From NCBI GenBank assembly GCA_002269645.1, contig NIVC01001817.1:170167-234166 (forward strand): 64,000 nucleotides of DNA, read 5' to 3'. The position numbers and the translations under genes are program-made. How positions within the stretch are numbered: the first letter of the stretch is position 1; each line of letters opens with the position of its first letter. The stretch comes from Macrostomum lignano. Taxonomy: Eukaryota. Under the pieces are notes generated by a model. That model had not been told where the DNA came from and searched no databases. It saw only the letters and a program-made list of their open reading frames with translations. Positions 1,859 through 46,091 of the stretch are shown in pieces.

Positions 1859-2822
1859 TCTTTCCCCCTCATTGCAACTCAGTGAGTTCTCTGTTGGACT
1901 ATGCAATCTATTGTTAATTTATATACAATTTCTGACTTTTATTGACCCATTCTTGTCTAAATTGCTAAATATAAGTAAATAAACAAATAAATTATAACTA
2001 AATTTTAAAAGCATGAGGATGCCTGATGCAAGGCAAAATATGTTGCATAACAAAAAATGATAGCGCTCACATTTTTAATTTTGCTTATCATCAGACTTGC
2101 AAGTTGCAACTTTACTACAAAAATATTAGCTATTGAAGTACTAATAGACATAGGCAATAACATAATAGGTACAAGTTAAAAATGCATTTCTATTATCTAT
2201 TATTAATTTTAGGTAAACGGTAGGAGTAACTATGACTATAGTATTAGTGCTTAATGCCTCATCATCTAATTATTACTTATTAGACAGTTAAAATGTCTTT
2301 TAAGTTTGAATTTTTGTGACCTACCTTGGCCAGACCTCTTACTCTCCATGTGACCCAATTGGAGGGTCAGCCAGGTGTTGGGCATGTATTTTCTGATAGT
2401 CTCTTTGCTACAGAGAATCTTTGGTAGCCTGTTGATTACAAAAAAATTCTACAACCAAGTTTACTATTAGACTAGCTTTAAGACCCTAGCCATTAGAAAG
2501 ATAGTTGTATACAAAATTTAAATAGTTATATCCATGCTGCTATGTATACTGCTGGAAGTAGTCTCTAGACACACCAGTACTATGATTCATTTTATCCCCA
2601 CCATCCAATCCTAGACTGCTTTATAATTTTTTTCAACAGCTAACCAATAGAAAAGCCAGCTTAGCTCATTCTTTGATAAAAAAGAATGTACAGTTTGTCA
2701 GTATAAAGTGTACACGCTGTCATCTATGTATATGCTTAACTCCGTTTCACTCATTCAGAGATTTCAATCTCAACCATCGTCCCAAACGATACAACAAAAT
2801 TGTTCTATATCCTATTTGTACA

Positions 2823-8030: not shown

Positions 8031-8061
<31 letters not shown>

Positions 8062-8062
8062 G

Positions 8063-8107
<45 letters not shown>

Positions 8108-8127
8108 GCCTGTCCTGTCTGTCTGCC

Positions 8128-8160
<33 letters not shown>

Positions 8161-8229
8161 GCCTGTCCTGTCTGTCTGTCTGTCTGTCTGTCTGCCTGCC
8201 TGTCTGTCTGTCTGTCTTTTTGTCTTGCC

Positions 8230-8284
<55 letters not shown>

Positions 8285-17804: not shown

Positions 17805-18400
17805 GAGACACTCCCTGAGTCATAGACACCCATTCCTGGCTCATTGACACTCATATTTGAGTCGTAGAAATTCATCCCCGACTTATGGACACTCATCTCC
17901 GATTTATAGACAGTGGACACTCATCCCTGGGCCATGGACACTTATCTCCGACTTATGAACAGTTGACACTCATCCCTGGGTCATGGACACTCATCTTCGA
18001 GTTATGAACAGTAGACACTCATCCCTGGGTCAGGGACACTCATCTCCGATTTATAGACAGTGGACACTCATCCCTGGGTCAGGGACACTCATCTTCGAGT
18101 TATGGACAGTAGACACTCATCCCTGGGTCAGGGACACACATCTTCGAGTTATGGACAGTAGACACTCATCCCTGGGTTAGGGACACTCATTTACAAGTTA
18201 TGGACAGTGGACACTCATGCGAGTCGTAGACCTCCCCAAATCACAGACACTCATACCCGTGTCGTAGGCACTTATCCCCGAGCCATGCACACTCAACTCC
18301 GAGTCTTTGACACTCGTCCCTGAGTAATGGACAGTATCCCTCAATCATGGACAACTCATCTCCGAGTCATGGACACTCGTCCCTGAGTCATGAACAGTCA
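17805..18400. repeat. Degenerate ~49-bp dimeric minisatellite built on gacactcatc, immediately upstream of COPS3
   Basis: gggacac(t/a)catcttcgagttatggacagtagacactcatccctgggtca has period 49 (18082, 18131) and decays at both ends. Confidence 0.85.
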
Positions 18401-18487
18401 TTCCCAAGTTACTATAGAAATAATTTTATAACTAACTACTATACCTTAATGAGTAGTAATAAAGCTTGTCATTTGATGCCGTCAGCC

Positions 18488-21012: not shown

Positions 21013-21463
21013 TCAGTTGCTGGGCCAGCCTTCCAGATCCTCAGTTGCTGGGCCAGCCTTCCAGATCCTCAGTTGCTGGGCCAGCCTTCCAGATCCTCAG
21101 TTGCTGGGCCAGCCTCCCAGATCCTCAGTTGCTGGGCCAGCCTTCCAGATCCTCAGTTGCTGGGCCAGCCTTCCAGATCCTCAGTTGCTGGGCCAGCCTC
21201 CCAGATCCTCAGTTGCTGGGCCAGCCTCCCAGATCCTCAGTTGCTGGGCCAGCCTCCCAGATCCTCAGTTGCTGGGCCAGCCTTCCAGATCCTCAGTTGC
21301 TGGGCCAGCCTCCCAGAGTGTCAGTTGCTGGGCCAGCCTCCCAGAGTGTCAGTTGCTAGGCCAGCCTCCCAGATCCTCAGTTGCTGGGCCAGCCTTCCAG
21401 ATCCTCAGTTGCTGGGCCAGCCTCCCAGAGTGTCAGTTGCTGGGCCAGCCTCCCAGATCTTCA
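21013..21463. repeat. 28-bp minisatellite (tcagttgctgggccagcct(t/c)ccagatcc), array 1
   Basis: Period 28 (21013, 21041), about 16 units. Confidence 0.95.
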
Positions 21464-22059
21464 CTTGCATGAATACTATTGGTAGTTACTGGTTGTCGAA
21501 CAATCAAGATGAAGTTGAAATTTTCAATAAGTTTCGACTTTCTCCAGTTGTGACTATCTAGATAAGCCTAATTGTTAAACTGTCTTTTTACTTGGTGTTA
21601 CTGGCAGTTTATTAAACGTCTTGGCTGCTTATATTGTGAGAGATTGCGCTCTAATTATACCCGATTATGCATGTGTTACGTTTACGTTATGCGTTTTACA
21701 GTGTTTATTAATATTACCTGTTGATTTTGCCTTGCTTTTAATTTCTATAATATGTATACTGTTCTTAGTATATCAGAATTTCATAGATAGTTTAATAGTA
21801 CAATACTTAAGGATTAAAAAGTAAACTTTTTAAATTAAGTACAGTGCTATCCTGCATTGAATGCATGCTTAGCTTCGTTATTTATTAACGCACTCCAAGT
21901 TATCGCCTACTGCGCATCAAATCGACCGCAATGCCTGGGTCACGTGATCGACCGCCGCCGCCTCCGGATTTTACGTGGACTAAAAATTTTATTTATGGAA
22001 TTGAATGGCGTAAGTCTGTTTTGATTACTGTTGACTTATTTCGCACTTCGAATAATTTC

Positions 22060-22916: not shown

Positions 22917-23089
22917 TTATTATTCGCCAATTCACCATGTTTAACTAGTATTATGTATTAGCTAAGCCTTAGCAACTCGCTTCTGTTATAGTCAAAGTCT
23001 GTTATGCTCTGCTTTATCTATGAGGTTTTGCCACTGCTGTGATAACTTATAAGCTAGTTTCAGCGGCTGAGATATACTGCTATTGCCGT

Positions 23090-24600
23090 CAGCCTCCCAG
23101 ATCCTCAGTTGCTGGGCCAGCCTCCCAGATCCTCAGTTGCTGGGCCAGCCTCCCAGATCCTCAGTATCTGGGCCAGACTCCCAGATCCTCAGTTTCTGAG
23201 TTAGACTTCCAGACTCTCAGTTGCTGGGCCAGACTCCCAGATCCTCAGTTTTTGAGTCAGACTCCCAGATCCTCAGTTTCTGAGTCAGACTCCCAGATCC
23301 GCAGTTTCTGAGTCAGACTCCAGATCCTCAGTTTCTGAGTCAGACTCCCAGATCCTCAGTTTCTGAGTCAGACTCCCAGATCCTCAGTTTCTGAGTCAGA
23401 CTCCAGATCCTCAGTTGCTGGGCCAGACTCCCAGATCCTCAGTTTCTGAGTCAGACTCCAGATCCTCAGTTTCTGAGTCAGACTCCAGATCCTCAGTTGC
23501 TGGGTCAGACTCCCAGATCCTCAGTTTCTGAGTCAGACTCCAGATCCTCAGTTTCTGAGTCAGACTCCCAGATCCTCAGTTTCTGAGTCAGACTCCAGAT
23601 CCTCAGTTGCTGGGCCAGACTCCCAGATCCTCAGTTTCTGAGTCAGACTCCAGATCCTCAGTTTCTGAGTCAGACTCCAGATCCTCAGTTTTTGAGTCAG
23701 ACTCCCAGATCCTCAGTTTCTGAGTCAGACTCCAGATCCTCAGTTTCTGAGTCAGACTCCCAGATTCTCAGTTTCTGAGTCAGACTCCAGATCCTCAGTT
23801 TCTGAGTCAGACTCCCAGATCCTCAGTTTCTGAGTCAGACTCCCAGATCCTCAGTTTCTGAGTCAGACTCCAGATCCTCAGTTGCTGGGCCAGACTCCCA
23901 GATCCTCAGTTTCTGAGTCAGACTCCAGATCCTCAGTTTCTGAGTCAGACTCCAGATCCTCAGTTGCTGGGCCAGACTCCCAGATCCTCAGTTTCTGAGT
24001 CAGACTCCAGATCCTCAGTTTCTGAGTCAGACTCCCAGATCCTCAGTTTCTGAGTCAGACTCCAGATCCTCAGTTGCTGGGCCAGACTCCCAGATCCTCA
24101 GTTTCTGAGTCAGACTCCAGATCCTCAGTTTCTGAGTCAGACTCCAGATCCTCAGTTTTTGAGTCAGACTCCCAGATCCTCAGTTTCTGAGTCAGACTCC
24201 CAGATTCTCAGTTTCTGAGTCAGACTCCAGATCCTCAGTTTCTGAGTCAGACTCCAGATCCTCAGTTGCTGGGCCAGACTCCCAGATCCTCAGTTTCTGA
24301 GTCAGACTCCAGATCCTCAGTTTCTGAGTCAGACTCCAGATCCTCAGTTTTTGAGTCAGACTCCCAGATCCTCAGTTTCTGAGTCAGACTCCCAGATTCT
24401 CAGTTTCTGAGTCAGACTCCCAGATCCTCAGTTTCTGAGTCAGACTCCAGATCCTCAGTTGCTGGGCCAGACTCCCAGATCCTCAGTTTCTGAGTCAGAC
24501 TCCAGATCCTCAGTTTCTGAGTCAGACTCCAGATCCTCAGTTTCTGAGTCAGACTCCAGATCCTCAGTTTCTGGGTCAGACTTCCAGATCCTCGTTTCCT
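23090..24600. repeat. 27/28-bp minisatellite array 2 (ccagatcctcagtttctgagtcagactc), derived from the array-1 unit
   Basis: It starts with array-1-type units (gctgggccagcct) and shifts to ttctgagtcagact units, with hybrid units interspersed. Confidence 0.95.
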
Positions 24601-25368
24601 CGTTTCCTTGAGTCAGACTCAAACTTCAGTATCTTCAATACCAATTAGGTCAAGTTATATTGAACCAAAGAAATTAAATTTTATCCGACATAGTTCCCGT
24701 TTGTCTTTAACTTATTACTAACAAAAGGTGTTTTCCTAAGAAAATGCGTGTTGAGTTCATTTCCTTCATTTATTTATGAACTTGTTAATCTATATTTTTT
24801 CATTTACTGTACACCGGAGCCCTCTGTTCGTAATAATCTATCTGGCGTGTTTTAATTCCACTAGTTGGTCCCGCGCTTGTATGACAACACGCATAGGTAT
24901 TCGTATACTTAAAGATTCTCATTTTCAGTGTATACTTTATTTCGAATAGTCTGTATTTGTGCAGCACTAAACATTGTGAGAATTGTATTGATTTTATTTC
25001 CTTTAGTCATTAATATTACTACATGTATGTCTAATTTTGCATGTACACAGAGGCAACAGATAAAACCGCTTCTCAGCTATACGAATATATACTCTTGTTT
25101 CCTCATATTTTCATTCATTTTGTTAAATATTATTGATTTCATTCATTTATAGAGAGAGCGGTATAGAGCTGTCTAATAGTTTTTAGTGCTGTTTTGTCTT
25201 GAAGTCAATTTTTTAAAATACATTCATTGAGACTTCTTCCTCCACTAAATGGTTCTTGTTTGTATAATTATTTGTTTAGCATATGTCAGGTAGATGTCAT
25301 TGAGTTAGTTTTTGTCTTGGAGCAACTTAGAGAGACTTGAAACTTATATCAACACAATGCATGTCGCC

Positions 25369-28300
25369 ATGGAGCTGCACGGAGCGGCGGCAGCCCCAAA
25401 CGAATCTGCGGTATTATTGAGTAGCCAATCTCAAACTGCAGAGAACTTGCAACATCACTCTGAGCAGTCGCCTGATCGGGGCAGCGAACCAGAGCAAGCC
25501 GTTCAGGAAGATGATGAAGGCAACTCTGAAGTTAACGAAGATTCAGAAGAGACAGGGCAACACGAGGCTGAGACCTCCTTAGATGAGTCGGGAAGTCAGC
25601 CGCATGAGGACACAATGCCAGCAGAGCAAGAGGAAGAGGTTGAGGAAGAAGAAGCAGATCACGAAGATGAGGAGGAGGCAGAGCACGAGGATGAAGAAGA
25701 GGTAGAGCAGGAGGATGAAGAGGAGGCAGAGCAGGATGAAGAGGAGGCAGAACAGGAGGATGAAGAAGAGGCAGAGCACGCGGATGAGGAGGAGGCAGAT
25801 CAAGAAGATGCAGAAGAGGCAGGCAATGATACAAAAGACGAATCAACCGATTCAAGCTCGTCAGACAGCGATAGCGGCCCCTCAACCGATGGTGAATCGG
25901 CGAATTTGCGTCACAAATGCGAACAGTGCAACAAATCTTTTGTCTCCAAACGAAATTTAACAGTACACAAACGGGTGCACAGCGGAGAAAAGCCGTTCCA
26001 GTGCAACATTTGTCAGAAACGGTTCACACAGAGGGCTCACATGAGAAGGCACATCGAAGCGGTGCACAAGGACGAATCTGAGCAGCAGAGCGACTCAGGC
26101 GATGCCCGTCGCCGCCGCCGCGGTGGCGGCAGAAAAAAGTCGTCAACTGACGTAAAGAAACACGAATGCGAGCAGTGCGGTAAAAAGTTCCGATGGAAAG
26201 CGGCGTTGGAGGTTCACTTCCGGGTGCACAGCGGCGAGAAGCCCTACCAATGCGAGGAGTGTCCAAAAAAATTTGCCCGGCCCAGTCACCTGCAGGGTCA
26301 CGTGGCCGCGGTGCACAAGAAGGAGAAGCCGCACAAATGCCAGCACTGCGACAAAGCATTTGCCGATCCGAGCGCTCTGAGAGTTCATACTCGAACTCAT
26401 ACGGGCGAAAAACCATACGAGTGTAAAGTGTGCCACAAGAAGTTTAATCTGTCCAGTCAGCTGAGGGTGCACTTCAGGCTGCACACGGGAGAGAAACCGT
26501 TTCAATGCAACGTTTGCGGCAAGCGGTTTAGCCAGTCTAGCACTCTGTTCTCTCATTTGAAGAGTAAAACTGGTAAGAAATCCCATTGTTTGTGTGAAGT
26601 TTTACTTACTACGGTTCAGAAAGGGTTTTGTATTTGGTGCTAGGCCTAAGAGTGTTGTGGCCTTGTGGTTAAAAGCGTTGGACTTACGACTGAAAGGTTG
26701 AGGGTTCGATCCTCGACTCATTTTCGAACAATTTGTGTCCTTGAGCAAGGCGCTTAACTCTGCATTGCTTCGGTTGTCCTAGCTGTTAAATGGGTGCCAG
26801 CATTAGCTGGGGTAATTGAGGTTGAGTGTGGCGACCCCCCAGTCCTTGGACTGAACAGCCGTACGCAGCCTTCACAGATGCGTCGCGCAATCGCTGCGGC
26901 TGAGCTGTCGGTTGCACACCTGGCTGAATAATATAGAAGGGCGTTCTCCGGCTGGTGACTAGGGGAGGGGGCGCTGTATGTGCGATAAAGTATGTGCCTT
27001 GAGAAGTTGAGAAAGACTGTGTATAGAGGGTCTTCTACGAGTAATTAATCGCTGTGCTACTACTATCGGTGTAAATCTTATTTCAGTCCACGTGCGCCGC
27101 AACGAGCCTACAGTACAAATCTATTACGCTCCTGTCGCGCCTCCGCAAGCAAATTTCTCCGCCGTGCAAAATGTACCGCCACAGCCGCCGCCGCCGCCAC
27201 CGCCGCCACAACCGCCGCTGCAGGCGCAGTACATGCCAAATTTGCAGCCTAGCGGAGCTAACAACTGCGAATTGATGCCAGATTTATTGGAGACACTATA
27301 CGTGTCTGAAATGATGTCAGCCGGCGCGATGCCGCCTAGCCATCAACAGCAGCCGGTTAATAATTTTGTAATCAGCGGCGGCGCTGCTGACCAGCAGATG
27401 TCGGCGGTGATGCAGAACGGACCGCCGCCGCAGGCTAATCTGGCTAGCAGTAGCTACAGTGCGGGCGCGCCTGTAATCATAACTCGCTACCGATGCGCTC
27501 ACTGCATTAAGACCTTCTCTAGCCAGGCAGACCTGGAGAAGCACCAGCGAGTGCACAGTGCCGACCGGCCCTACCACTGCAACATGTGCGACAAGCGGTT
27601 CCTGAAGTCCAGCCATCTGCGAATCCACATTGCCGGGGTGCACAACAAGGAGCGACCGTTCACCTGTCAGTACTGCGGCGGAGGCTTCGCCGACCGCGGC
27701 ACGCTCAACGTGCACATTCGCAAGCACACGGACGAACGGCCCTACCAGTGCAAGATGTGCGGTAAACGGTTCAAAAGCTCCAGCCAGGTCAGCACCCATT
27801 CGAGGATTCACACGGGCGAAAAACCGTTTAAGTGTCATCTGTGCGGTATGCAGTTCCGCATGTCTGGCCATCTGAACTATCATCTGAGGCGGCATAGCAA
27901 GGGTGAGTAGCTGTTTTTTGATATTTTGTAGCACTGCACCAAAGCTGCAGACAAAGCTGTTTGGCCTTATAAATCCGGGAATCCGATCTTACAAAAAAAG
28001 GAAATTTAGTCCTGTTAGCTTTTGTGAACTAGAAATCTTATCCGTTAGCCGTATTTGCCAAACTTTTTTCAGGACTAGCTGTCCAGCAGTACCAGCCGTC
28101 GCCAGAAGTTATGCCCGGTCCTAATCCGACACCGCAAGACTTGCATCAGCAACACCAACAGCATCAGCAGCACCAACAGCACCAGCAACACCAACCGCAT
28201 CAGCAACATCAACAGCACCAACAGCATCAGCAACATCAGCAGCACCAACAGCACCAGAACCAGCAGCATCAGCATCAGCAGCATCATCATCAGTTACCCT

Positions 28301-30095
28301 CCGAGCTGGAAATCAGTAACTTTGTGCTCAATAGCATGCCTATGGCGCCTATGCAGCAGCAGCAGCAAAATATACCAAACATGAATGTTCCTAGCACTAG
28401 CGGCAGCAACTTCAATGATGCTGCTGCTGCTGCTGTTGCTCCGCCACCTGCCGCCGTTGAGTCCCGTTTCCGTTGCCTCAGCTGCATCAAGTCGTTTGCA
28501 AACCAGGCAGACCTGGAGAAGCACCAGCGAGTGCACAGTGCCAACAGGCCCTACCACTGCAACATGTGCGACAAGCGGTTCCTGAAGTCCAGCCATCTTC
28601 GAATCCACATTGCCGGGGTGCACAACAAGGAGCGACCGTTCACTTGTCAGTACTGCGGCGGAGGCTTCGCCGACCGCGGCACGCTCAACGTGCACATTCG
28701 CAAGCACACGGACGAACGGCCCTACCAGTGCAAGGTGTGCTTGAAACGGTTCAAAAGCTCCAGCCAGGTCAGCACCCATTCGAGAATTCACACGGGCGAA
28801 AAACCGTTCAAGTGCAACGTGTGCGGTATGCAGTTCCGCATGTCTGGCCATCTCACCTATCATCTGAGGCGGCACAACAAGCGTGAGTAGCTTTATAATT
28901 GTCAACGTTATCACACAGTCAACTTAGGTTCCACAGGATCGATTTCGTGTTTGTGCCTGCGTACGTATCCGTGTGCTTTGATTTTACGTTCAGAAGCTGG
29001 TTGAGATTGTAGGCCCAGTTGAAATACCTGCTGTTACAATAGTGATTACGTGTTGGTTTCGTTCCAGCGCCTGTACAGCCGCCAGAAGTAGCTCAGGGCA
29101 TGCTTCAGCATGCGGCCGACAATGCGCCCTCAATAGGTCAGCAGCAGTTGCAAGGTGCTGGTCAAGCCCAGCCTGACTCCTCTCTGAACGATGGCGATTC
29201 ACCAGCGGGTCATCATTCAGCTCATGCCGCCGCGTCAAGCAGCTATAAGCCGAAGAAGAAGAACTCAAAACAGACTGACTCTGAAGATGAAGACGATTCC
29301 GTTGATCTTGACAACGATTCGGACTCCGACAGGCCAGTCAAGCGTCGGCGTCACCGATGCGATGAATGCGGCAAGAGCTTTGCTACTAAGCAAACTTTGA
29401 AAGTGCACCGTCGAGTTCACAGCGAGGATAGCAAGCCGTACGAATGCGACACTTGTGACAAACGTTTCTCCCAGTCTGGCCATCTCAAGCGCCACATGGA
29501 GGTGGTGCATAAGAAGACTCTAACTTCGACGTCTTCTAGAAAGAAATCTAGCTCAGGTAAAGCTGGCAAATCGGTGAAAAAGAAGCACCGCTGCGAGCAC
29601 TGCGGCAAGACGTTCCCGTGGAGGACAGCGTTGGAGGTTCACCTCCGGGTGCACAGCGGCGAGAAGCCCTACCAATGCGAGGAGTGTCCAAAGAAATTTG
29701 CCAGGCCCAGTCACCTGCAGGGTCACGTGGCCGCAGTGCACAAGAAGGAGAGGCCGCACAAATGCCAGCACTGCGACAAAGCATTTGCCGATCCGAGCGC
29801 TCTGAGAGTTCATACTCGAACTCATACGGGTGAAAAACCCTACCAGTGTAAAGTGTGCGGCAAACGATTTAATCTGTCTGGCCAGCTGACCAGCCACAAT
29901 AGGCTGCACACTGGCGAACGGCCTTTTCAATGCAACGTTTGCGGCAAACGGTTCGGCCATTCCGGCAGCCTGTCCACTCACGCCAGGGTGCACACCGGTG
30001 AACGGCCCTACCAGTGCCAGGTGTGCGGCAAACGGTTCACCCAGAATAGCGGACTGACCACGCACTCTAAAGTGCATTTGAAGCAGCAGAATTGA
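25369..30095 (+). CDS. Multi-array C2H2 zinc-finger protein, gene 1 (4 exons, ~1285 aa, 25 fingers: 7+5+5+8)
   Basis: join(25369-26572,27087-27902,28073-28882,29068-30095) = 3858 nt. All introns are GT-AG, phase 1, in frame with the ORF track. TGEKP-type linkers; acidic E/D-rich N-terminus starting MELH (start could be 25357). I see no KRAB/BTB/ZAD/SCAN domain. The exons could alternatively be annotated as separate ORFs. Confidence 0.82.
26650..26925 (+). mobile_element. tRNA-headed CORE-type SINE in ZF gene 1 intron 1
   Basis: A box tggccttgtgg and B box ggttcgatcc, followed by tgtgtccttgagcaaggcgcttaactct...gctgttaaatggg, which aligns with the CORE/MIR central domain. Two more copies lie in the window. 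Confidence 0.82.
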
Positions 30096-30784
30096 ATTAA
30101 TAACTAATGCCTTCTGTGGCTCATTGCGCTATTCTTCTATTACTTATCAGTTTGTAACTATTGCTAGGTGGTACTTAAGTACATTTTAATTTGAGTTGTT
30201 GTTTATCATGGTTATAAAAAATGCACCTAAGCCCTTAGCTATGATATACTGTACTTGCTGTATGCCTTGTTTTGTTCGTATTGCTACACTTGATCTGCTT
30301 TATTTTCTCTCTGTTTATATACACTCGTATATAGGCACAGTTTTTGCTATTTCCCATTGTCTATTATCTTCTACCTACGAAGTAAGCAGCATCTTTGTTT
30401 TGCTTTTTTTATTGATACGTTTTATTGTCGACTCATCCCCAATGTTTATTTTTTTAATCACGTCGCTTATATCTCATCGCACTTAGGTTGCGATGCACTT
30501 TTATTTATAATTATCTCTGCTTGTTAACGGAGAAAGGTTTAGTATAAGCAGCTTAGCAAAAATATTTATTATATACTGCTGACTCGCAAAAGTTGCATGC
30601 CTGTTTATACATTCATTACGATACGGTTTTGCTTGTCACTGTAAGCAGTGAAAATTATACTAATTTTTTTTTGTCCTGCTACAATTTTGCGTATATTTTT
30701 TCCATTATTTACTCTGTATATGCACGAGTATTTAATTTTGTTCTGGCTAGCGCGATATAAATAAAACTCTAAAATTAAAAAGCT

Positions 30785-30965
30785 TCTATAGTCTATGGCC
30801 GGGCGAAAGTGGGGGGGGGGTCGTTCCACCCCTCCTCGCTTCTTTCACTGCACTTGTCTATGGCCGCGACAGACCGGCTTCGGCCACGCTTATGGGAATG
30901 AATGAAGGAATACTCTGGATTGCTCATCTGAAATAGTCTATGGTCGAGTTCTTTCCTCCAAACTT
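30785..30965. mobile_element. Fragment of the gtctatggcc-motif element family also found at ~6140-7330
   Basis: ggcttcggccacgcttatggga is the reverse complement of tcccataagcgtggccaaagcc (~6168); three gtctatgg(c/t) motifs. Confidence 0.65.
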
Positions 30966-32055
30966 GGAATTTACCCCCCCCCCCTAGGAATCTATTGGCT
31001 GATGAAAGTTAAAAATAATCCCCCGTAGGACTTGATTGGATGCTGAATCAGTCCATCAAATACATCTTTGGATTTCCCTCAAATTTTCAGCAGCTAGACA
31101 TGCTTGTAGGTAGAAACGTCTAAATAAAGCATCACGCTGTTGCCTGCGGACGTCTCACCGGCCCTGATCATTAATGGAGACTGGAATGGGCGACCGGTCT
31201 GAGCCCTAACTGGTTTTGTTTTTGATTTAGTAGCGAGGGTTGAAATTACGTCTCCTATTGCTGTATTCTTTCATCCATGCTTATGGGTCTCAAAGACAAA
31301 GAACTTTAAAAGATGGTTCAGGCCATTCTCGAGGGATTGCAACTTTCTTTTTCTTTAAATTCGATTATCTTTTTGTGTATTTTTCCTTTGCATGCCTGAT
31401 GTAGCTATGCGCTTGTTATGCGAAGCAATTTTTTAATAAAACTATAGTTTTTTTAGTTAAACTTTTATGCTTAAGATGTCCTTAACTCTTCTGGGAGCTA
31501 TCTATTGTTACTATCATAATTTTTTACTTCACTTTTAACTTATTTTCATTGGCTATTTGTTTTATTGAATAGACTTGCTTGCTTGCGTGTTGTCTACGAG
31601 TAAAACTAAGTGGGTTTTTTCTCTGCAAAGCGTCTTTTCTCTAAAAAATTCTATAAAAAGCTGTATTCTCGTATACACACCCTCTGGTTTTTTTGTTATA
31701 GTTTGCGTGCTTCTAGTGCAAAAACAACTTATTTAACTATAATCGACTATTTTGCGTTAGTAATTTGTACGTACTTCATAGTTATAGTATTGCACCTTGC
31801 GTGAATTAGCAGGAATTAATTCAAACTGTCTGCTATAATTACACTTTATTGCTCGTATATATATGACTGCATATTGTAGTGCAAAAATATACATTATGGA
31901 CAAATAAATGCGTCATTTCGTTACTTATTTTTCAGTTTTATTCTAATAGAAACTCCGAAACAAAAGTAGGAATTTTCTCGCATATGAGTATAAAGCCCTC
32001 TAATGACTGAAGCGACTACTTACGCCATTGCGTCACTAGTAAATCAAAATTTGAA

Positions 32056-32326
32056 CCTCTGTAGCTGGCGCCCCCTCTTTAGCTGTCGCCCCCTCTGTAG
32101 CTGGCGCCCCCTCTTTAGCTGGCGCCCCCTCTGTAGCTGGCGCCCCCTCTGTAGCTGGCGCCCCCTCTGTAGATGGCACCCCCTCTGTAGCTGACGCCCC
32201 CTCTGTAGTTGGCTCCCGATCTGTAGCTGGCGCCCCCTCTGTAGCTGGCGCCCCCTCTGTAGCTGGCGCCCCCCTCTGTAGCTGGCGCCCCCTCTGTAGC
32301 TGGCGCCCCCTCTGTAGCTGGCGCCC
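32056..32326. repeat. 18/19-bp minisatellite (ctgtagctggcgccccct) ~280 bp upstream of ZF gene 2
   Basis: Direct tandem repeat, about 15 units. Confidence 0.95.
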
Positions 32327-32602
32327 TCCTCGGATAAAATTTCAAACACTTCCTGACCGAGTTTGGCATCCCCCACCGTCACGCAGCATTTCCAAGATGA
32401 GGCCCGCATTAGTTTTTGGAGGGAAGTCATCCTTTTAAATTTTAAGGCTGAGGAATACCTTCACACACCGGAACTTCTACTTTCCGCTTTCCGATCTTCA
32501 ACTTTCCTCAAACTTTCTATTCACGTGATGTCAAAAGCTACCCGTATTTAAAGGACGACAACAACAGCTGCAGTTTATTTATTTATTTGCATTCATGCTC
32601 TG

Positions 32603-35600
32603 ATGGAGCTGCATGAAACTGCGGCAGCGGAATCTCTGCCAGCGAATCCCAATCCCAAGTCGGCATTAGTTTATCAAAATTCTGTAAACTCCGAGTCGAA
32701 CTGCGAAGTCGAATGTAGTTCAGAAGTAGGTCAAGCCGACGATAGAAGCTCCTCCGAAGCTAGCGAAGAGGCTGAACAATCCAAGTCCTCTGTGAACGAG
32801 TCTGCAAATCAGTCGCCGGAAGAGGTCACAATAGAACAGGAAGATAATGATGAGAGTGAGGCAAGCGGCTCTGAGCACAGTAAATCTGACGAAAGCTCAG
32901 TGGATATTAAAAGAAAAAAAAGGGTTAAGCGACCGAAGCCGCGTCACCAGTGCGAGCAGTGCGGCAAGTTCTTTGCTTCGAAGAAGAATTTAAAAGTCCA
33001 CTATCGCGTGCATAGCGGCGAGCGGCCATATCAGTGCGAGTATTGCCAGAAACGATTCACTCAGATGGGTCATCTGAAGTCTCACACTGAAGCTAAGCAC
33101 GCTGATAAACTTCAGGAATCTGGCGCTGCTGGAGATGCTAATACAAAAGCTAAAAAGCTCTACCAATGCGTAGAGTGCGACAAAACTTTTCCTTGGAAGA
33201 ATGCATTAGATATTCATTTTCGAGTTCACTCCGGCGAACGGCCGTTTAAATGCATCGAGTGCCCGAAGAAGTTCACTCGGCTAAGTCACCTGCAGGGTCA
33301 CGTGGCCGCCGTGCACAAGAAGGAGAAGCCGCACAAATGCCAGCACTGCGACAAAGCATTTGCCGATTCTTGCTCCCTTCGAGTTCACACTAGAACGCAC
33401 ACGGGCGACAAGCCCTACCAGTGCAAAGTGTGCGACAAGAAATTCAGTCTGTCTAGTCAACTGACTCGTCACTCGAGGCTGCACACTGGCGAAAAACCCT
33501 ACCAGTGCAATAGATGCGAAAAACGATTTAATCAGCCAAGCAGTCTAGCCAGTCACTTGAGAACGCATACTGGCGAAAAACCTTACCAGTGCACACTGTG
33601 CGGCAAAGGCTTCACTCAGTCTGGCAGCCTTGCTAATCATTTAAGGAGTCACACTGGTGAGTCGACTGTTAAATTTGAGTGTTGCGTTGTGTTGGAGAAA
33701 CACCAAGTCAGATGAACGCAAAGGTTATTAATGAACTGGAATTTACGAAACACTGATGACAAACAGTAGAGAACTCTGCAAAGATACACCTGACACCTTT
33801 GAAATGATATGCTCAGCAACATTGAAAAGTCGCCACTCTTTGCTCCAGTGAGCAGGTCTTTCGACCAGCGCCTCCCGTCCAAGCTTCGATCCATCCAATC
33901 TTCGCCCTCCGCTCTTCCCAAATATTGTTGAGTAAATTTATTAGTTCAGAATTTAAGTGCACCCTGTCACAGTTTAGATTAGCAAACTATCTAAATATTG
34001 ACCTGCGAGACATTGAGAACTGCGTGACCCAATTCGCTGCTTTTTTTCACCTGACAGCGTACTTTGTTGTTTTTGTTGTTGTGACCCAAGATCACTAACG
34101 AGAACAGGACCTGCCGAAAGTGCCATGTAGAGGTAGAAAGTTCACGTCCTGTTTAAGTGTAGTTGGAACTTCTATAGTGCTTCCCGTGATAAATTTGAAT
34201 AGGAGGTCCCAGATAAAGTTAGGAATTTAAAAAATCTTACAGCAGATGATTAAATATTTCGCCTACTGACTCAAGAAAATATATACGTAATGGAAATTGA
34301 GGCAAAATCCATCAAAGACATGACCCTAGCCACAATGCAAATGTCATGAAGCTTCATTCCGAATACAAGCTTAAATACTATGTTTGCGCAAGATACTTTA
34401 TTTTGACTCTCTATGTCGGGAATTGTAGCCTAGTAGTTGAAGCTTTGAAGCCCAACAGCTTCCTATTTCTAAACAAATCCGAAAACCTCGAGCCGTACTT
34501 CCTACCATTAACTATTTAAACTACTGACCGCTACTAATAGTAGGGTAATTGAAAAAACTTGACTTCTTCGACAAATTCCATGAAAAATCTTTGTTGTTGT
34601 CGGATTGACTCCTGATGCCAATCCAATTTCAACTTATGCTTGTATAATATTTCAGAAAACGTGCAGCACAATGAAGCGACAGCTGCGTCAGCATTTTACG
34701 TCCCCAACGCGCAGCCGCATCAGTCGAGTTTTCCTATGCCGAACGCTCCTCCCCCGCCGCCGCTGCCGCCGCCACACTTCATACCGGATCTGCAACCAAG
34801 TGCAGCAAATCATAGCGATCTTGTGCCAGACCTGCTAGAGACTTTGTACGTGTCCGAGATGATGCCAGCAGGTGCGATTAATAGTTTCGTACTCAGCGGC
34901 GAGTTAATGAGCTCCGTTGCTATGCCGAATGGACCGAGCTCCGGAGCTGGAGCTTCTACGATTGAATCGCGTCTCCGATGCGGCCACTGCGTCAAGACGT
35001 TCTCTAACGAGGCCGACCTGGAGAAGCACCAGCGAGTGCACAGCGCCGAACGGCCGTTCCCCTGCGAACTGTGCGACAAGCGTTTCATGCGGGCCAGCCA
35101 CCTGAGAATCCACATCAACGGGGTGCACAAGAAGGAGAAGCCGTTCTGCTGCCAGTACTGCGGCAGAGGCTTCGCCGACCGCGGCACGTTGAACGTCCAC
35201 ATCCGGAGTCACACCGGGGAGCGTCCGTTCCCGTGCAAGGTGTGCGGCAAGAGGTTCCGAAACTCCAGCCATCTCAGCAATCACTCCAGACTGCACACTG
35301 GTGAAAAACCGTTCAACTGCGACGTGTGCGGCAAGCAGTTCCGACTGTCCGGTCATCTTGCCTATCATTCGAGGCAGCACAAACGTAGGTTCACCATTTA
35401 TTTTCATTGTTCTAATCTATATCGTTTCTTTGAAACTGTACTTAGTTTTTATCGACAGCATTATTATACAGATTGGCTCGTACTTTTTGTTTAGTTCAAA
35501 CAGAGTGAAATATTTTATACATCCAGGTCAGGACGCCGCTCCTAACGAAGGCACAGAGCACACTGAGGAGCAGGCCCTAAATCTTCCCAATAATGAGGCG

Positions 35601-37229
35601 CATTATTCTGGAGACTTGGAAGACAATTCGCACGAAGACGACTGCGATTCAGATCCTGGTTGCGTAGAGGAGCGGCACTGTTTGGCGCACGATGCCAACC
35701 AGCCGGGCCCATCCAATGCGGTCTCTATTGAGCAATCGGGTGTTCCAATGCCCAGCCAGCAAGAGATTAACACTTTCGTGCTCAACGGCATGCCCGCAAT
35801 GACAGTGGCGTCAGCTCAGAACGGGTTGGTGGTTGCTAATCCAGCTGATAGCATCAGCAATGCCAGCTTCAATGCTGTCCCGCCAGCTGTAGTGGAGCCT
35901 CGCTACCGATGCGGCCACTGCGTCAAGACGTTCTCTAACGAGGCCGACCTGGAGAAGCACCAGCGAGTGCACAGCGCCGAACGGCCGTTCCCCTGCGAAC
36001 TGTGCGACAAGCGGTTTATGCGGGCCAGCCACCTGAGAATCCACATCAACGGGGTGCACAAGAAGGAGAAGCCGTTCTGCTGCCAGTACTGCGGCAGAGG
36101 CTTCGCCGACCGCGGCACGTTGAACGTCCACATCCGGAGTCACACCGGGGAGCGTCCGTTCCCGTGCAAGGTGTGCGGCAAGAGGTTCCGAAACTCCAGC
36201 CATCTCAGCAAGCATTGGCGAATTCACACCGGAGAAAAACCTTTTAAATGCGACGTGTGCGGCAAGCAGTTCCGACTGTCCAGCCATCTCACCTACCATT
36301 CAATTCGGCACAAATGTAAGACGCTTGTATTGTAGCTCAGATTACATTTTTAACTCCAATTTGTGCTTAGATATAGTGTAGCGTTCATTTTTTTAGTTCC
36401 TACCAAGCGACGTTACGCGGCCGCTAATCAAGCTCAGCCGACTCAACAGCAGCAATCAGGTGCTGGCCCGTCCCGGCTTGCTCCACTGCCCGACGAAGAA
36501 TCGACCAGGAACTCGTTGGAAGATGGCGAACAGGAAGAGACGCAACCAACGGAGGTACATTCGACAGCGAAGTCTAGCAGGAAGAAGGCTTCAAGCCGGC
36601 CTAAGAAGGCTAAAGATAATTCCTCGACAGCAAAGAAGCGCTACCCATGCGAGCACTGCGAGAAAAGCTTCATGTGGAAGAGCGATCTAAGACGTCATAT
36701 CAGAGTGCACAGCGGCGAGCGGCCGTTCGAGTGCGATACCTGCCAGAAAGGCTTCACCAGGCTGAGCCATCTGCAGGGTCACATCGCGGCTGTGCACCGG
36801 AAGGAGACGCCGCACAAGTGCCAGCACTGCGACAAATCATTCGCCGACGCGTGCGGTCTAAGGGCGCACGTACGGACGCACACGGGTGAAAAGCCCTACC
36901 AGTGTAACGTGTGCAACAAGCGGTTCGCTCTGTCTGGTCAATTGAGCACTCACACTAGAGTGCACACTGGTGAGCGGCCTTATCAGTGCAAAGTGTGCGA
37001 CAAACGATTCATTAGCTCAGGTCAGCTCACCTGTCATTCAAGACTGCACACCGGTGAGCGACCCTACGAATGCAACGAGTGCGGTAGGAAATTCAGCCAA
37101 TCGTACAGTCTGAACTATCACAAGATGGTGCACTCGGGTGAAAAACCCTTCCAATGCGAAGTGTGCGGCATGCGGTTCATCAGATCGGACAGTCTGCTAA
37201 TGCACTCCACCACTGTACACGCCAAGTGA
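32603..37229 (+). CDS. Multi-array C2H2 zinc-finger protein, gene 2 (4 exons, 1134 aa, 25 fingers: 8+5+5+7), paralog of gene 1
   Basis: join(32603-33656,34656-35384,35527-36315,36397-37229) = 3405 nt; all introns GT-AG, phase 1. It starts MELH like gene 1 and shares spacer motifs with it ([13 protein letters not shown]; FVLxG). Confidence 0.82.
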
Positions 37230-41684: not shown

Positions 41685-44224
41685 TGGGTCTGATTGGGTC
41701 TGATAGCGAGCAGACCCAATATTCATGTTTTTATATGGCTTGTCTTTCTTGTGAAGAATCGGTTTTGTTACAGAATAAAAAAAATGACAAAAGATATAAA
41801 ACGAATGAATTAATTAACTTGTGCTATCTTTTTATCTGTGCTATGATTTTAGGCACAGGAAATGTACGAGTACGTAGAAGATGATATTTACATTATAGAA
41901 TCTTAACTTTCTAAACAAAAAGTTAATTTACGAATATCAATATGGAACTATAAGAAAGCCAATTCATATCAAAATATGAACATTATGGGTCTGCCTGCTA
42001 TCAAAAGCAATTTCAACTTTTTTGTGCTGGAATCGGCCTGCGCGTCTCTCGGTCGAACAGCTCGCCATCAACCACGAGGCCAATTTTTTTGGTTTGATTG
42101 CGCAACTTATAGTTATTTTTTCGTCGCTTTGTATAACACATCAGTCGGGAGTACGAGATTTTCCCGCAGGGCAAAGCTCGCTGTGTGACAATCTCATAGA
42201 CCCCATCAACCATTATCCGATTTAATGGCTCATCATTTGATAATAGCTCTTTTTCTGACCGCATCCTTTTCAAGTTGCGAGTGCATATCCGTCGCCTCTC
42301 GCGCTAGCACCCAATCGTATAGTGGCGCTCTTGGCTTAATCTGCCCCTCCCCCACCGAAATGGGGTATGCAGATGCAACCCACCCCGCTGACTAAAAGGG
42401 TCGATTCACGTTGTCTGTCATCCATCAGTCTGCCATCAGTCATTGTTTGTTTGTCCTACCTTATTTTGAGCAAGTACCTTTCCCTTTCAAGGTACTTTCT
42501 CCTTTTTAATTTGTAATGTCTGTGATATAGATTTGATATAGGGGGAAGCGATTGGAGGTCCATACGACGTACCTAGGAAGAGCCCACACAGGGCTCATGG
42601 TGCCTTCTCATTGGCTGGAAGAGCAGCATGCCACTACGCCCCCAATCCCCATAGCAGCTCCACTCACCCAAGGTACTATGCACTGAGTCGGGATGGGGGG
42701 GATTTTCGTTGTTCTTGTTTCCAACCAGCCCCCCCCCCCCGCCGTCCCTGCGCCACCCCACCATCCGTGCTCATACTCCTCAATCGCGCTCAATGGGAGA
42801 CGGGGAGACTTGGGTGGCAACGGCACCACCCCCAACACTCTCCCACTCCACGGGCCATAAATAGCCTTGACAGGACTTGCTGGGGTCTGTTGATGGCGCT
42901 CGTTTGCAATACGGCCTGTGTCATACGGTGAGCGCCTGCGCTCCCAGACTCCTCTGTTCTTTAACTGAGCTAGACAGTTTCAAAATACGTCAACAGTTGA
43001 TAGAGGAACCAACCAAGGAACCGTTGAGGTGAGACAATTACTTAACCGTGTGTTACTAAATTTTTTCATTATTTAAGAATCAGCATGCAGCTTCTCGACT
43101 TTTCTCTTCCCCTGTCCGCCTCGCAGAGTTGCCGATGCTTGTCAATCAATTCTGAAATTGCTGTTCCGCCCGCTAATTAGGGAAACCGGGGTAGTTAGCG
43201 GCTGGTAGGTAGGCGACTCCTGAGTGGGACCGTTTTTTGCTGCAGTTCAACGGATTCATAATCGCCTGCCGAAAAAATTGTTGTCCTCAAATATGATGAG
43301 GTGTGCTTGAGTTGAAACGAACACATTACGAAGCACAACAAAAAAGATTCTAATTAGAAATTTGCTGGATTGTTTCGATCTGATTGTATAGGCAGGAGGA
43401 GGCTTAACGGGATTTGGAAGCACCTGCAGACAGAATCCACTGACCCATAGGAATCCATGGTAAAATTATTGTAGACATATCTTTATATTGTAAGGTTGAG
43501 TCCTTCGAGCTCTTCTTATCTAGAAAAGAATTTCCAGAAACGATCCAATACCGAAGTGAATTACTAAATAATTCAAACTGTTCTAATGAACATATTTGCT
43601 TACAGCTCTTTCTGTTTGTCTTCTGTCTGTTTTAAAAGCTTTTTAGTGTCAATTTTCTGGTAACCCATGCAGCCCGCGGGGTTGAACATCAACAGCATTA
43701 TTGTTAGTACATTTGGATTAGACTATGGCATCTAGCAGAATGCTCAGCAAGGGGTATGTGCTGCTTAAGCTCCTCAGGGGGCTTACAGAGAATATTATAT
43801 CAGCTTGGAAGTTCTAATAGCTTACAGGACTGTCTGCTTCTGATAGAGGCTGTTTTGTCGGGCCGAGGTGGAAGGACATGGTGAGGCTGGAGTGGGTTGG
43901 ATGCTTAGGATTGGGGTTTTTTGGTTGAGTAAATAGTGCTGGCACCAGCTATCCTCAGTTTCAGGCGTGCCACTGTAACTGCCTGCTGATATTGTCAGCG
44001 CTTTGCAAAAGCGACGAAAATGATGTGGAGGCAGTGAGGAGACTGAGAGGGAAATAGAATAGTTAGACACCAGTTGCACTCAACCATGCAGCCTGTCATT
44101 ACTAATTGGATATTAGTTAAGAAAATTAGTTTTGTTTATTATTGAAAATATTAATATTGCCTTTGTAAGTTTAAGCTTCTCTTTTAGACCGCTACAGGTA
44201 TTAAAATGTAAATGGTTCTGTCAG

Positions 44225-45792: not shown

Positions 45793-46091
45793 TGGAGTCA
45801 AGTCGCCTTTCGTTGTCCCATCCTCTGAATTTAAATTAATTGTCTCGGCAAGTCGCATTTCTAATTTCAATTCTGCTGCACCTCTTCCGTACTGTTTACG
45901 TTTATTGTACATCACCTGCGCACTTTGGAATTATTTTTAGCAACCCCAGACATAAGCGCGGCTCTTCCCAACAACGAAACGTTCGCATCGTTCCCTCGGC
46001 TCAAAGTGGCAGATTTTACTAATACAAGATTTCACTTTCACTTGAGTAGTTGCCATTTCTCCTCCGCTTCATTTCAGGGTGAAACGGCTGA

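What the first reader, a model, noticed from the sequence alone, without database searches (positions are those of the whole stretch)
25369..37229. Two tandem 25-finger ZF genes whose finger arrays are homogenised within each gene while spacers stay orthologous between genes
Seen: both genes have an A-B-B'-A' exon layout. Spacers pair by position across genes: exon 2 has [27 protein letters not shown] vs [27 protein letters not shown], and exon 3 has ELEISNFVLNSMP..PPAAVESRFRC vs [24 protein letters not shown]. Finger blocks instead pair within genes. Gene 1 exons 2/3 are near-identical in DNA (LKSSHL..IAGVH..KSSSQVST), and the identity extends into the intron as gtgagtagct. Gene 2 exons 2/3 are near-identical with a different set (MRASHL..INGVH..RNSSHLS). 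A-type exons 1/4 share ARPSHL/ADPSAL in gene 1 but TRLSHL in gene 2. Inference: the layout predates the gene duplication, and intragenic gene conversion now copies recognition-helix changes between the arrays of one gene. This would give each paralog a repeated, gene-specific binding code, akin to concerted evolution of PRDM9/KRAB-ZF arrays but acting between exons. These may be lineage-specific repeat- or TE-binding factors with no recognisable effector domain.
Basis: partly seen in the sequence, partly recalled or inferred. Interest (0 to 1): 0.78.

Follow-up and report, generated by a model that had tools for sequence, protein, structure and literature searches.

The report
Flatworm zinc-finger genes with self-copying exons
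Two neighbouring 25-finger zinc-finger genes, apparently from the flatworm Macrostomum lignano, keep overwriting one finger-coding exon with its sister exon in the same gene, a clean but mechanistically ordinary case of gene conversion between duplicated exons.

Summary
Both genes splice cleanly into four coding exons (GT-AG, all introns phase 1), giving 1289 and 1134 aa with 25 C2H2 fingers each; one finger in gene 1 is degenerate. All eight exons carry the same gap-free 5-finger, 402-nt module in the order A-B-B'-A'.

The B finger blocks group within genes: 93-94% nt identity against 78-80% between genes, dS 0.17-0.20 against 0.67-0.78, quartet sites 58:0:1, bootstraps 99-100. The spacers group by position between genes (alignment z = 21.6 and 10.1, against -0.1 and 1.1 within genes).

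Identity is mosaic. Gene 2 has 306 nt with 2 mismatches, then about 82% identity. Gene 1 has a 390-nt tract, plus a 231-nt tract between exons 1 and 4. Permutation p is <1e-4 and 0.0008. The best explanation is recurrent non-allelic gene conversion limited to the slowly evolving finger DNA.

The "gene-specific binding code" is overstated. Contact residues are nearly the same in all four B blocks and only finger 4 differs between genes; dN/dS is about 0.2. Gene 2's outer exons are not homogenised.

The only database relative carrying the spacers is one Macrostomum lignano protein. Pfam finds no effector domain. This is a new member of a known kind, of moderate interest.

The parts
25357..26572 (+). 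Gene 1 exon 1 (A module). The ATG is at 25357, or at 25369 by homology with gene 2's MELH start. Contains an acidic low-complexity N-terminus, 6 intact fingers and 1 degenerate finger.
27087..27902 (+). Gene 1 exon 2 (B module): Pro-rich spacer with the [13 protein letters not shown] motif, then 5 fingers. Phase 1-1, 816 nt.
28073..28882 (+). Gene 1 exon 3 (B' module): poly-Q/H spacer with the EISNFVLNSMP motif, then 5 fingers. Phase 1-1, 810 nt.
29068..30095 (+). Gene 1 exon 4 (A' module): spacer, 8 fingers and the stop codon.
32603..33656 (+). Gene 2 exon 1 (A module): 8 fingers.
34656..35384 (+). Gene 2 exon 2 (B module): spacer with [13 protein letters not shown], then 5 fingers. Phase 1-1, 729 nt.
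35527..36315 (+). Gene 2 exon 3 (B' module): acidic spacer with [11 protein letters not shown], then 5 fingers. Phase 1-1, 789 nt.
36397..37229 (+). Gene 2 exon 4 (A' module): spacer, 7 fingers and the stop codon.
27523..27912 (+). Gene 1 B/B' conversion tract, copy 1. Its partner is 28503-28892, 980 nt downstream. 390 nt with 19 mismatches; the core 27567-27754 has 2 mismatches. It starts 30 nt into finger 1 and ends about 10 nt into the intron.
28503..28892 (+). Gene 1 B/B' conversion tract, copy 2.
34975..35280 (+). Gene 2 B/B' conversion tract, copy 1. Its partner is 35906-36211, 931 nt downstream. 306 nt with 2 mismatches. The rest of the block (finger-4 helix to finger 5) is only 82% identical.
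35906..36211 (+). Gene 2 B/B' conversion tract, copy 2.
26203..26433 (+). Gene 1 A/A' conversion tract, copy 1. Its partner is 29628-29858, 3425 nt downstream. 231 nt with 8 mismatches, covering fingers 3-5 of the module.
29628..29858 (+). Gene 1 A/A' conversion tract, copy 2.
27236..27328 (+). Conserved exon-2 spacer motif in gene 1 ([31 protein letters not shown]). Acidic-hydrophobic; a candidate effector or interaction motif.
   Evidence: 69% nt identity to 34784-34876, dN 0.12, synonymous sites saturated; 5 of 22 identical codons.
34784..34876 (+). The same spacer motif in gene 2 ([31 protein letters not shown]).
28303..28341 (+). Exon-3 spacer motif in gene 1 (ELEISNFVLNSMP). Its positional counterpart in gene 2 is 35757-35795.
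35757..35795 (+). Exon-3 spacer motif in gene 2 ([13 protein letters not shown]).
26506..26568 (+). Degenerate 7th finger of gene 1. The second His is replaced by Lys (CNVCGKRFSQSSTLFSHLKSK).

Best explanation
These are two real tandem paralogous genes of a lineage-restricted C2H2 poly-zinc-finger family. The source is Macrostomum lignano or a very close relative.

Each gene is built from four exon-encoded copies of one 5-finger module, whose second finger has an H-x4-H spacing. The modules are ordered A-B-B'-A', and each is preceded by a fast-evolving spacer. This four-module layout existed before the gene duplicated. That duplication is old: synonymous sites in the spacers are saturated.

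Since then, repeated non-allelic (ectopic) gene conversion has overwritten one finger block with its sister block in the same gene. In both genes this happened between B and B', about 0.95 kb apart. In gene 1 it also happened between A and A', 3.4 kb apart.

Why the pattern is mosaic (inferred). Conversion needs sequence similarity. It therefore persists in the slowly evolving, GC-rich finger DNA and stops at the diverged spacers and introns. The result is fingers that group by gene and spacers that group by position, with tracts of different ages (99.3%, 98.9%, 96.5%, 95%).

Selection (shown). The finger blocks are under purifying selection (dN/dS about 0.2) and DNA-contact residues are nearly the same in all four B blocks.

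Function (inferred). The proteins are probably sequence-specific DNA binders that carry two near-identical reading heads. The conserved acidic-hydrophobic spacer motif [13 protein letters not shown] is the best candidate for an effector or cofactor contact. The DNA targets are unknown.
For: Gene structure: in-frame GT-AG splicing with all introns phase 1. All eight modules align gap-free over 402 nt.

Incongruent histories: the finger-block tree gives (g1e2,g1e3) 100, (g2e2,g2e3) 99 and (g1e1,g1e4) 97. Quartet sites in the B block are 58 within-gene, 0 positional, 1 other. Spacers pair across genes with z = 21.6 and 10.1, against -0.1 and 1.1 within genes.

Synonymous homogenisation: dS is 0.17-0.20 within genes against 0.67-0.78 between genes. 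Four-fold-site identity is 0.88-0.93 against 0.50-0.59.

Mosaic tracts with sharp edges inside exons: gene 2 has 2 mismatches in the first 285 nt of the block, then 21 in 117. Gene 1 has 12 in the first 36 nt, then 17 in 366. Sawyer-type permutation gives p<1e-4 for g2e2/g2e3 and p=0.0008 for g1e1/g1e4.

Positional signal outside the tract: quartet sites in A fingers 6-7 are 9 within-gene, 11 positional and 5 other, against 18:3:1 in fingers 3-5.

GC3 is 0.79-0.90 in converted B fingers 1-3, against 0.54-0.61 in the spacers. This fits GC-biased conversion.

Independent assembly: UniRef A0A1I8JPS6 (M. lignano) is a frameshifted genomic prediction. It carries both gene-1 blocks with their diagnostic differences, SADRPYH in the exon-2 copy and CKVCLKRF and CNVCGMQF in the exon-3 copy.

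Pfam finds only C2H2 families. The closest solved structures are canonical DNA-binding arrays: ZNF568, PRDM9, CTCF and Aart.
Against: No transcript evidence was obtainable, so the four-exon models rest on splice signals and frame alone.

No orthologue from another species could be found. Concerted evolution could therefore not be shown across species, and tract ages and directions are not calibrated.

The permutation test for g1e2/g1e3 alone is only p=0.08.

A single segmental replacement by unequal exchange cannot be formally separated from conversion for any one tract.

The GC3 excess could reflect codon usage in finger-coding DNA rather than biased conversion.

DNA binding, the reading of the spacer motif as an effector contact, and any target are inference.
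Confidence: 0.85

Rival explanations
1. Homogenisation is maintained by selection, not merely tolerated. The protein needs two identical reading heads, for example to bind directly repeated DNA such as the minisatellites that fill this genome. Conversion events that restore B = B' would then be favoured.
For: Both paralogues independently show their most perfect identity over the same sub-region, fingers 2-3. Contact residues are conserved in all four B blocks. The window is packed with minisatellites.
Against: Identity at synonymous sites is not needed for protein identity, and purifying selection alone would keep the contact residues. A similarity-dependent neutral process predicts the same hotspot in the most conserved, GC-rich part. 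No target data exist.
Confidence: 0.2
2. The pattern comes from independent recent duplications in each gene rather than conversion. On this view the ancestral gene had a single B exon and each paralogue duplicated it separately.
For: The within-gene grouping of B blocks is what independent duplication would give.
Against: Exon-3 spacers match each other across genes (z = 10.1) and not the exon-2 spacer of their own gene (z = -0.1 and 1.1). Identity starts and stops inside the exons and does not include the introns or the upstream spacer. Tracts have several different ages within one block.
Confidence: 0.05
3. B and B' are alternative cassette exons rather than constitutive ones. Isoforms would carry the same DNA-binding head behind different spacers: the [13 protein letters not shown] motif in one, a poly-Q/H or acidic spacer in the other.
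For: Both exons are symmetric (phase 1-1, lengths divisible by 3), so skipping either one keeps the frame. The fingers are kept alike while the spacers differ completely.
Against: There are no RNA data. The intervening introns of 170 and 142 nt are, from general knowledge, too long for steric mutual exclusion. All splice sites look ordinary.
Confidence: 0.12
4. The near-identical blocks are an assembly or polishing artefact, with reads from one copy used to correct the other.
For: M. lignano assemblies are repeat-rich, and the older assembly behind A0A1I8JPS6 is full of indel errors.
Against: The copies sit in unique spacers and introns and still differ at 19-29 sites. They would have had to start at about 78% identity, too low for read mis-mapping. 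An independent gene prediction carries both copies with the same diagnostic residues. The same pattern occurs three times, at different ages.
Confidence: 0.03

Closest known systems
Non-allelic gene conversion between duplicate exons of one gene, for example exons 26a/26b of salamander Nav1.4 (PMC8476164, detected with GENECONV)
   Same: Two tandem duplicate exons of one gene exchange sequence. Multiple substitutions are homogenised between them, and detection rests on permutation of polymorphic sites, as.
   Different: Here it occurs in a poly-zinc-finger gene and in parallel in two paralogues. It also occurs between non-adjacent exons 3.4 kb apart. Only part of each exon (the finger array) is converted, while the 5' spacer of the same exon stays positionally orthologous.
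Concerted evolution of the PRDM9 zinc-finger array (PMC2779102)
   Same: C2H2 finger-coding DNA is homogenised within a gene by gene conversion or duplication, so fingers resemble each other more within a gene or species than orthologous fingers do.
   Different: PRDM9 has a single-exon minisatellite of 84-bp units with finger-to-finger homogenisation, changes in copy number, and dN/dS far above 1 at positions -1, 3 and 6. Here different fingers of one block are only about 50-56% identical. The unit is an in-register block of about 230-390 nt in separate exons. dN/dS is about 0.2 and contact residues are conserved. There is no KRAB or PR/SET domain.
[quoted passage not shown]
   Same: Repeat units in one protein stay alike through recombination. 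That survey describes the phenomenon as rare and lineage-specific.
   Different: That survey links concerted evolution to high repeat indel rates. Here the module number (4) and the finger number per B module (5) are stable between the paralogues.
Dscam duplicated exon arrays (PMC3236188)
   Same: Tandem duplicated, frame-symmetric exons that each encode a domain.
   Different: Dscam exons are mutually exclusive and show no gene conversion. Here conversion is strong and exon usage is unknown.

Membership tests
C2H2 (Krueppel-type) poly-zinc-finger proteins | Tandem C-x2-C-x12-H-x3-4-H fingers joined by TGEKP-like linkers; match to Pfam zf-C2H2 and zf-H2C2_2 | tested here: met
   25 fingers per gene. 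PF00096 E = 7e-113 and 8.6e-115; PF13465 E = 1.4e-132 and 1.7e-145. Best solved-structure matches are ZNF568, PRDM9, CTCF and Aart.
KRAB / SCAN / BTB / ZAD zinc-finger subfamilies | An N-terminal KRAB, SCAN, BTB or ZAD effector domain | tested here: not met
   Pfam reports only C2H2-type families for both proteins at E <= 0.01.
PRDM9-type concerted evolution | PR/SET domain | tested here: not met
   No PR/SET match.
PRDM9-type concerted evolution | Minisatellite-like array in which different fingers of one array are near-identical | tested here: not met
   Different fingers within a block average 49-56% nt identity, maximum 80%.
PRDM9-type concerted evolution | Diversifying selection at contact positions -1, 3 and 6 | tested here: inconclusive
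   Contacts are nearly identical between the paralogues except in finger 4, and block-wide dN/dS is 0.19-0.26. No orthologues were available for a site test.
Non-allelic (ectopic) gene conversion between intragenic duplicates | Adjacent segments of the same duplicates give conflicting phylogenies | tested here: met
   Fingers group within genes (58:0:1 quartet sites; bootstraps 99-100). Spacers of the same exons group across genes.
Non-allelic (ectopic) gene conversion between intragenic duplicates | Runs of identity longer than chance, by permutation of polymorphic sites (Sawyer/GENECONV logic) | tested here: met
   g2e2/g2e3: run of 46 polymorphic sites, p<1e-4. g1e1/g1e4: run of 23, p=0.0008. 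g1e2/g1e3: p=0.08.
Non-allelic (ectopic) gene conversion between intragenic duplicates | Homogenisation includes synonymous sites | tested here: met
   Four-fold-site identity is 0.88-0.93 within genes against 0.50-0.59 between genes. dS figures are.
Non-allelic (ectopic) gene conversion between intragenic duplicates | Copies are real in the genome (not an assembly artefact) and events are visible as polymorphism | not testable with these tools
   Only indirect support: an independent M. lignano prediction carries both blocks. No reads or population data were available.
Alternatively spliced tandem duplicated exons | Frame-symmetric duplicate exons | tested here: met
   Exons 2 and 3 are phase 1-1 with lengths 816/810 and 729/789 nt.
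Alternatively spliced tandem duplicated exons | Transcripts that include one exon or the other | not testable with these tools
   No transcript data were reachable. Protein searches returned no spliced product.

The most novel reading that the evidence does not exclude
The identity of B and B' could be functional. One form: each protein carries two identical multi-finger heads so that it reads directly repeated DNA, such as the minisatellites that saturate this genome. Another form: exons 2 and 3 are alternative cassettes that put one DNA-binding head behind different effector spacers. In either case, conversion restricted to the finger half of the exon would be the device that keeps the heads matched while the spacers diversify.
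Probability: 0.12. Interest if true: 0.6.

Novelty: new member of a known kind. Interest (0 to 1): 0.35.

Why it matters
This is an unusually clean natural example of how similarity-dependent gene conversion partitions a single exon. The finger half evolves in concert within a gene, while the spacer half evolves divergently and keeps its positional orthology.

It has a practical consequence for annotation and orthology assignment. Trees built from the finger arrays of such genes will mis-assign exon and gene relationships.

It also marks a lineage-restricted, effector-less poly-zinc-finger family in a regeneration model (Macrostomum lignano, where RNAi and transgenesis are available according to general knowledge). 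In that system the idea of two identical reading heads could be tested.

It does not reveal a new mechanism.

Tried and rejected
1. A full-length gene-2 protein search was swamped by generic poly-zinc-finger proteins and yielded no orthologue.

2. A profile of the exon-2 spacer plus two fingers again hit only through the fingers (31% coverage).

3. Spacer-only profiles were run against 1.84 billion representatives and against the 5.8-billion-protein set. Only P0135 (M. lignano A0A1I8JPS6) carries the spacers. The one other hit, P0136, matches only through a proline-rich stretch. Cross-species tests of concerted evolution were therefore impossible.

5. P0135 is not a transcript. It reads through intron 1 and contains frameshifts, so it does not confirm splicing.

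6. Possible between-gene exchange. An 83-nt stretch in fingers 4-5 is nearly identical in g1e1, g1e4 and g2e1, but the permutation test is not significant (p = 0.125). Between-gene dS of the B blocks (about 0.7) is lower than in the spacer motif, where it is saturated. This could be older between-gene conversion or codon bias, and it is left open.

7. tblastn found no further family member elsewhere in the window.

8. The Rfam scan of the window was empty.

9. I did not attempt recognition-code prediction of DNA targets against the local satellites. It is too unreliable to count as evidence.
Full report
WHAT IS THERE

The 24-38 kb part of the window holds two head-to-tail genes on the + strand. 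Reading the ORFs and the sequence at their edges gives four exons per gene with canonical AG/GT boundaries. Joining them yields one open frame each, of 1289 aa and 1134 aa, with the only stop at the end.

Gene 1 exons are 25357-26572, 27087-27902, 28073-28882 and 29068-30095. By homology with gene 2's MELH start, its ATG may instead be at 25369. Gene 2 exons are 32603-33656, 34656-35384, 35527-36315 and 36397-37229.

All six introns are phase 1, and exons 2 and 3 have lengths divisible by three. This is the classic signature of exon duplication.

A motif scan finds 25 C2H2 fingers in each protein, distributed 7+5+5+8 and 8+5+5+7. The 7th finger of gene 1 has lost its final His.

Pfam reports only C2H2-type families, with no KRAB, SCAN, BTB, ZAD or SET domain. 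The closest solved structures are canonical DNA-binding arrays: ZNF568, PRDM9, CTCF and Aart. tblastn finds no further family member in the window.

ORGANISM AND RELATIVES

The full-length query, and a query of spacer plus fingers, were swamped by generic finger matches.

Spacer-only profiles found only one protein carrying the spacers. It is P0135 = UniRef A0A1I8JPS6, from Macrostomum lignano. The one other hit (P0136) matches only through a proline-rich stretch.

P0135 aligns to gene 1 with frameshifts and reads through part of intron 1. It is therefore a gene prediction on an error-rich genomic assembly of the same locus, not a transcript.

P0135 establishes three things. The window comes from this flatworm or a very close relative. 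The spacers are lineage-restricted. An independent assembly contains both gene-1 B blocks with their diagnostic residues: SADRPYH in the exon-2 copy, and CKVCLKRF and CNVCGMQF in the exon-3 copy.

Another M. lignano poly-zinc-finger protein, P0013, shares the finger pair that contains the H-x4-H finger (HISAVH-KEKPHKC). It has four near-identical repeats of spacer plus fingers. The family therefore appears to be expanded in this species.

THE OBSERVATION CHECKS OUT

Every exon contains the same 5-finger module, in which finger 2 has an H-x4-H spacing. All eight modules align without gaps over 402 nt. They split into an A type (exons 1 and 4) and a B type (exons 2 and 3), with bootstraps of 98-100.

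B blocks (% nt identity from self-BLAST; dS over the 402-nt finger block):

| Comparison | % nt identity | dS |
|---|---|---|
| g1e2 / g1e3 | 93.2% (424 nt) | 0.196 |
| g2e2 / g2e3 | 94.2% (413 nt) | 0.170 |
| any between-gene pair | 78-80% | 0.67-0.78 |

- Four-fold-site identity is 0.88-0.93 within genes and 0.50-0.59 between genes.
- Of 59 quartet-informative sites, 58 support the within-gene pairing, 0 the positional pairing and 1 the third option.
- NJ bootstraps are 100 and 99.

Spacers of the same exons behave in the opposite way. BLOSUM62 local-alignment scores, measured against 300 composition-preserving shuffles:

| Spacer pair | z score |
|---|---|
| g1e2 - g2e2 | 21.6 |
| g1e3 - g2e3 | 10.1 |
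| g1e4 - g2e4 | 3.7 |
| the two N-termini | 3.4 |
| g1e2 - g1e3 (within gene) | -0.1 |
| g2e2 - g2e3 (within gene) | 1.1 |

The shared exon-2 motif, P(N/D)LQPS.AN...[17 protein letters not shown], is 69% identical at the DNA level. Its dN is 0.12 and its synonymous sites are saturated, with 5 of 22 identical codons among identical residues. The gene duplication is therefore old, and the motif is held by selection on the protein.

THE IDENTITY IS MOSAIC

Base-by-base comparison gives the following tracts.

- **Gene 2, B/B':** 34975-35280 matches 35906-36211, 306 nt with 2 mismatches. The remainder of the block (finger-4 helix to finger 5) is 82% identical, close to the 77% between-gene level.
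- **Gene 1, B/B':** the first 36 nt of finger 1 are as diverged within the gene (67%) as between genes (74%). Then 27523-27912 matches 28503-28892, 390 nt with 19 mismatches. The core 27567-27754 has 2 mismatches. The tract ends about 10 nt into the intron.
- **Gene 1, A/A':** 26203-26433 matches 29628-29858, 231 nt with 8 mismatches, across 3.4 kb. Beyond it identity falls to about 67% (45 mismatches in 138 nt).
- **Positional signal in the A blocks:** quartet sites switch from 18:3:1 (within-gene: positional: other) in fingers 3-5 to 9:11:5 in fingers 6-7. The positional orthology e1-e1 and e4-e4 therefore shows through where no conversion has occurred.
- **Gene 2, A/A':** the blocks are 69% identical with no tract. 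Their shared TRLSHL uses different codons.

A Sawyer-type permutation of polymorphic sites gives p<1e-4 for g2e2/g2e3, p=0.0008 for g1e1/g1e4 and p=0.08 for g1e2/g1e3.

GC3 is 0.79-0.90 in B fingers 1-3, against 0.54-0.61 in the spacers and 0.30-0.48 GC in the introns. This is compatible with GC-biased conversion but does not prove it.

WHAT IT MOST LIKELY IS

**Shown.**
- The four-module layout predates the gene duplication.
- Finger blocks have since been copied between sister exons of the same gene, several times.
- The copying includes synonymous sites and stops inside exons.

**Inferred.** The mechanism is non-allelic gene conversion during repair. It sustains itself where purifying selection keeps the DNA similar, and it is blocked by the diverged spacers and introns. 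Nothing here requires selection for homogeneity.

The alternatives fare as follows.
- Independent duplication of B in each gene is contradicted by the exon-3 spacers, which match each other across genes and do not match the exon-2 spacer of their own gene.
- An assembly artefact is unlikely. The copies lie in unique context and still differ at 19-29 sites. They would have had to start near 78% identity. They also recur in the independent prediction P0135.
- Nucleotide-level selection cannot make synonymous sites gene-specific.

The contact residues (-1, 2, 3, 6) of the four B blocks are as follows.

| Finger | Contact residues |
|---|---|
| 1 | SADK / NADK / NADK / NADK |
| 2 | KSHI (gene 1) / RSHI (gene 2) |
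| 3 | DGTV in all four |
| 4 | SSQT (gene 1) / NSHN and NSHK (gene 2) |
| 5 | MGHY (gene 1) / LGHY and LSHY (gene 2) |

Only finger 4 gives a real gene-specific code.

Block-wide dN/dS is 0.19-0.26. Different fingers within one block are only 49-56% identical.

This is therefore not the PRDM9 or KRAB-ZNF regime of finger-by-finger minisatellite turnover with diversifying selection (PMC2779102). It is closer to gene conversion between duplicate exons, as described for Nav1.4 exons 26a/26b (PMC8476164). It is also an instance of the rare, lineage-specific concerted evolution of domain repeats surveyed in PMC5100051. Dscam shows that tandem duplicate exons can also escape conversion entirely (PMC3236188).

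Binding to repeats or transposons remains untested.

OPEN POINTS

- **Possible between-gene exchange.** Between-gene synonymous divergence of the finger blocks (66-69% identical codons among identical residues in the B blocks, 52-61% in the A blocks) is lower than in the spacer motif (23%). An 83-nt stretch of fingers 4-5 is almost identical in g1e1, g1e4 and g2e1. Either rarer between-gene conversion or codon bias could explain both. The permutation test for that stretch is not significant (p = 0.125).
- **Parallel hotspot.** Both paralogues have their most perfect identity over fingers 2-3. This could be a similarity-driven or GC-driven hotspot, or it could reflect selection for matched heads.
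- **Exon usage.** Because exons 2 and 3 are frame-symmetric, they could be cassette exons. No RNA data were reachable.

VERDICT

The core evolutionary inference is supported. The functional gloss is weakly supported.

This is a well-resolved new example of a known process in a lineage-restricted flatworm zinc-finger gene pair. Interest is moderate (0.35).

Noticed in passing
window 26284-26366 / 29709-29791 / 33284-33366: An 83-nt stretch in fingers 4-5 of the A module is almost identical in g1e1, g1e4 and gene 2's exon 1 (1-2 mismatches), although the flanks are about 70-74% identical between genes. This may be a between-gene conversion tract. It is not significant by permutation (p = 0.125) because the region has few polymorphic sites.
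   Followed up: partly
window 25628-25822 and 28143-28289: Gene 1 carries two coding low-complexity expansions that gene 2 lacks. One is an acidic 24-nt repeat (EEEAEQED...) in exon 1. The other is an 18/36-nt CAG/CAC repeat giving a poly-(Q/H) run in the exon-3 spacer. The spacers therefore evolve partly by slippage.
   Followed up: no
window 21013-21468 and 23088-24598: A 28-nt minisatellite (about 16 copies) and a 28/55-nt minisatellite (about 55 copies of the 28-nt unit) have related units sharing CTCCCAGATCCTCAGTT. The second ends about 750 nt upstream of gene 1's start codon.
   Followed up: no
window 32056-32331: An 18-nt minisatellite (about 15 copies, 91% matches) lies about 270 nt upstream of gene 2's ATG.
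   Followed up: no
window 44218-45791, 46532-47517, 60440-60972: Large minisatellites: 20 nt x 79, 21 nt x 47 and 16 nt x 33. The long 'ORFs' at 44521-45915 (-) and 60360-61108 (-) are just translations of these repeats. In all, TRF reports 33 rows for the window, some overlapping.
   Followed up: no
window 2673-11779 (+): Exons of a sugar-transporter (MFS, PF00083) gene, with microsatellites (GTCT, TC) and minisatellites in the stretches between the matching ORFs.
   Followed up: partly
window 18347-20843 (+): A COP9 signalosome subunit 3-like gene (PF22788 N-terminal helical repeats plus a PCI domain). Minisatellites lie in the stretches between its matching ORFs.
   Followed up: partly
window 55779-56159 (+): An ORF with a C2 domain (PF00168). 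Together with 61622-61915 it may belong to a multi-C2 (ferlin-like) gene. This reading is by eye only, and the second ORF had no Pfam hit.
   Followed up: partly
protein P0013 (Macrostomum lignano, UniRef; not in the window): Another M. lignano poly-zinc-finger prediction contains four near-identical repeats of spacer plus fingers. It shares the finger pair that contains the H-x4-H finger (HISAVH-KEKPHKC) with the genes studied here. This suggests a family expanded in this species. In P0013 the spacers are homogeneous too.
   Followed up: no
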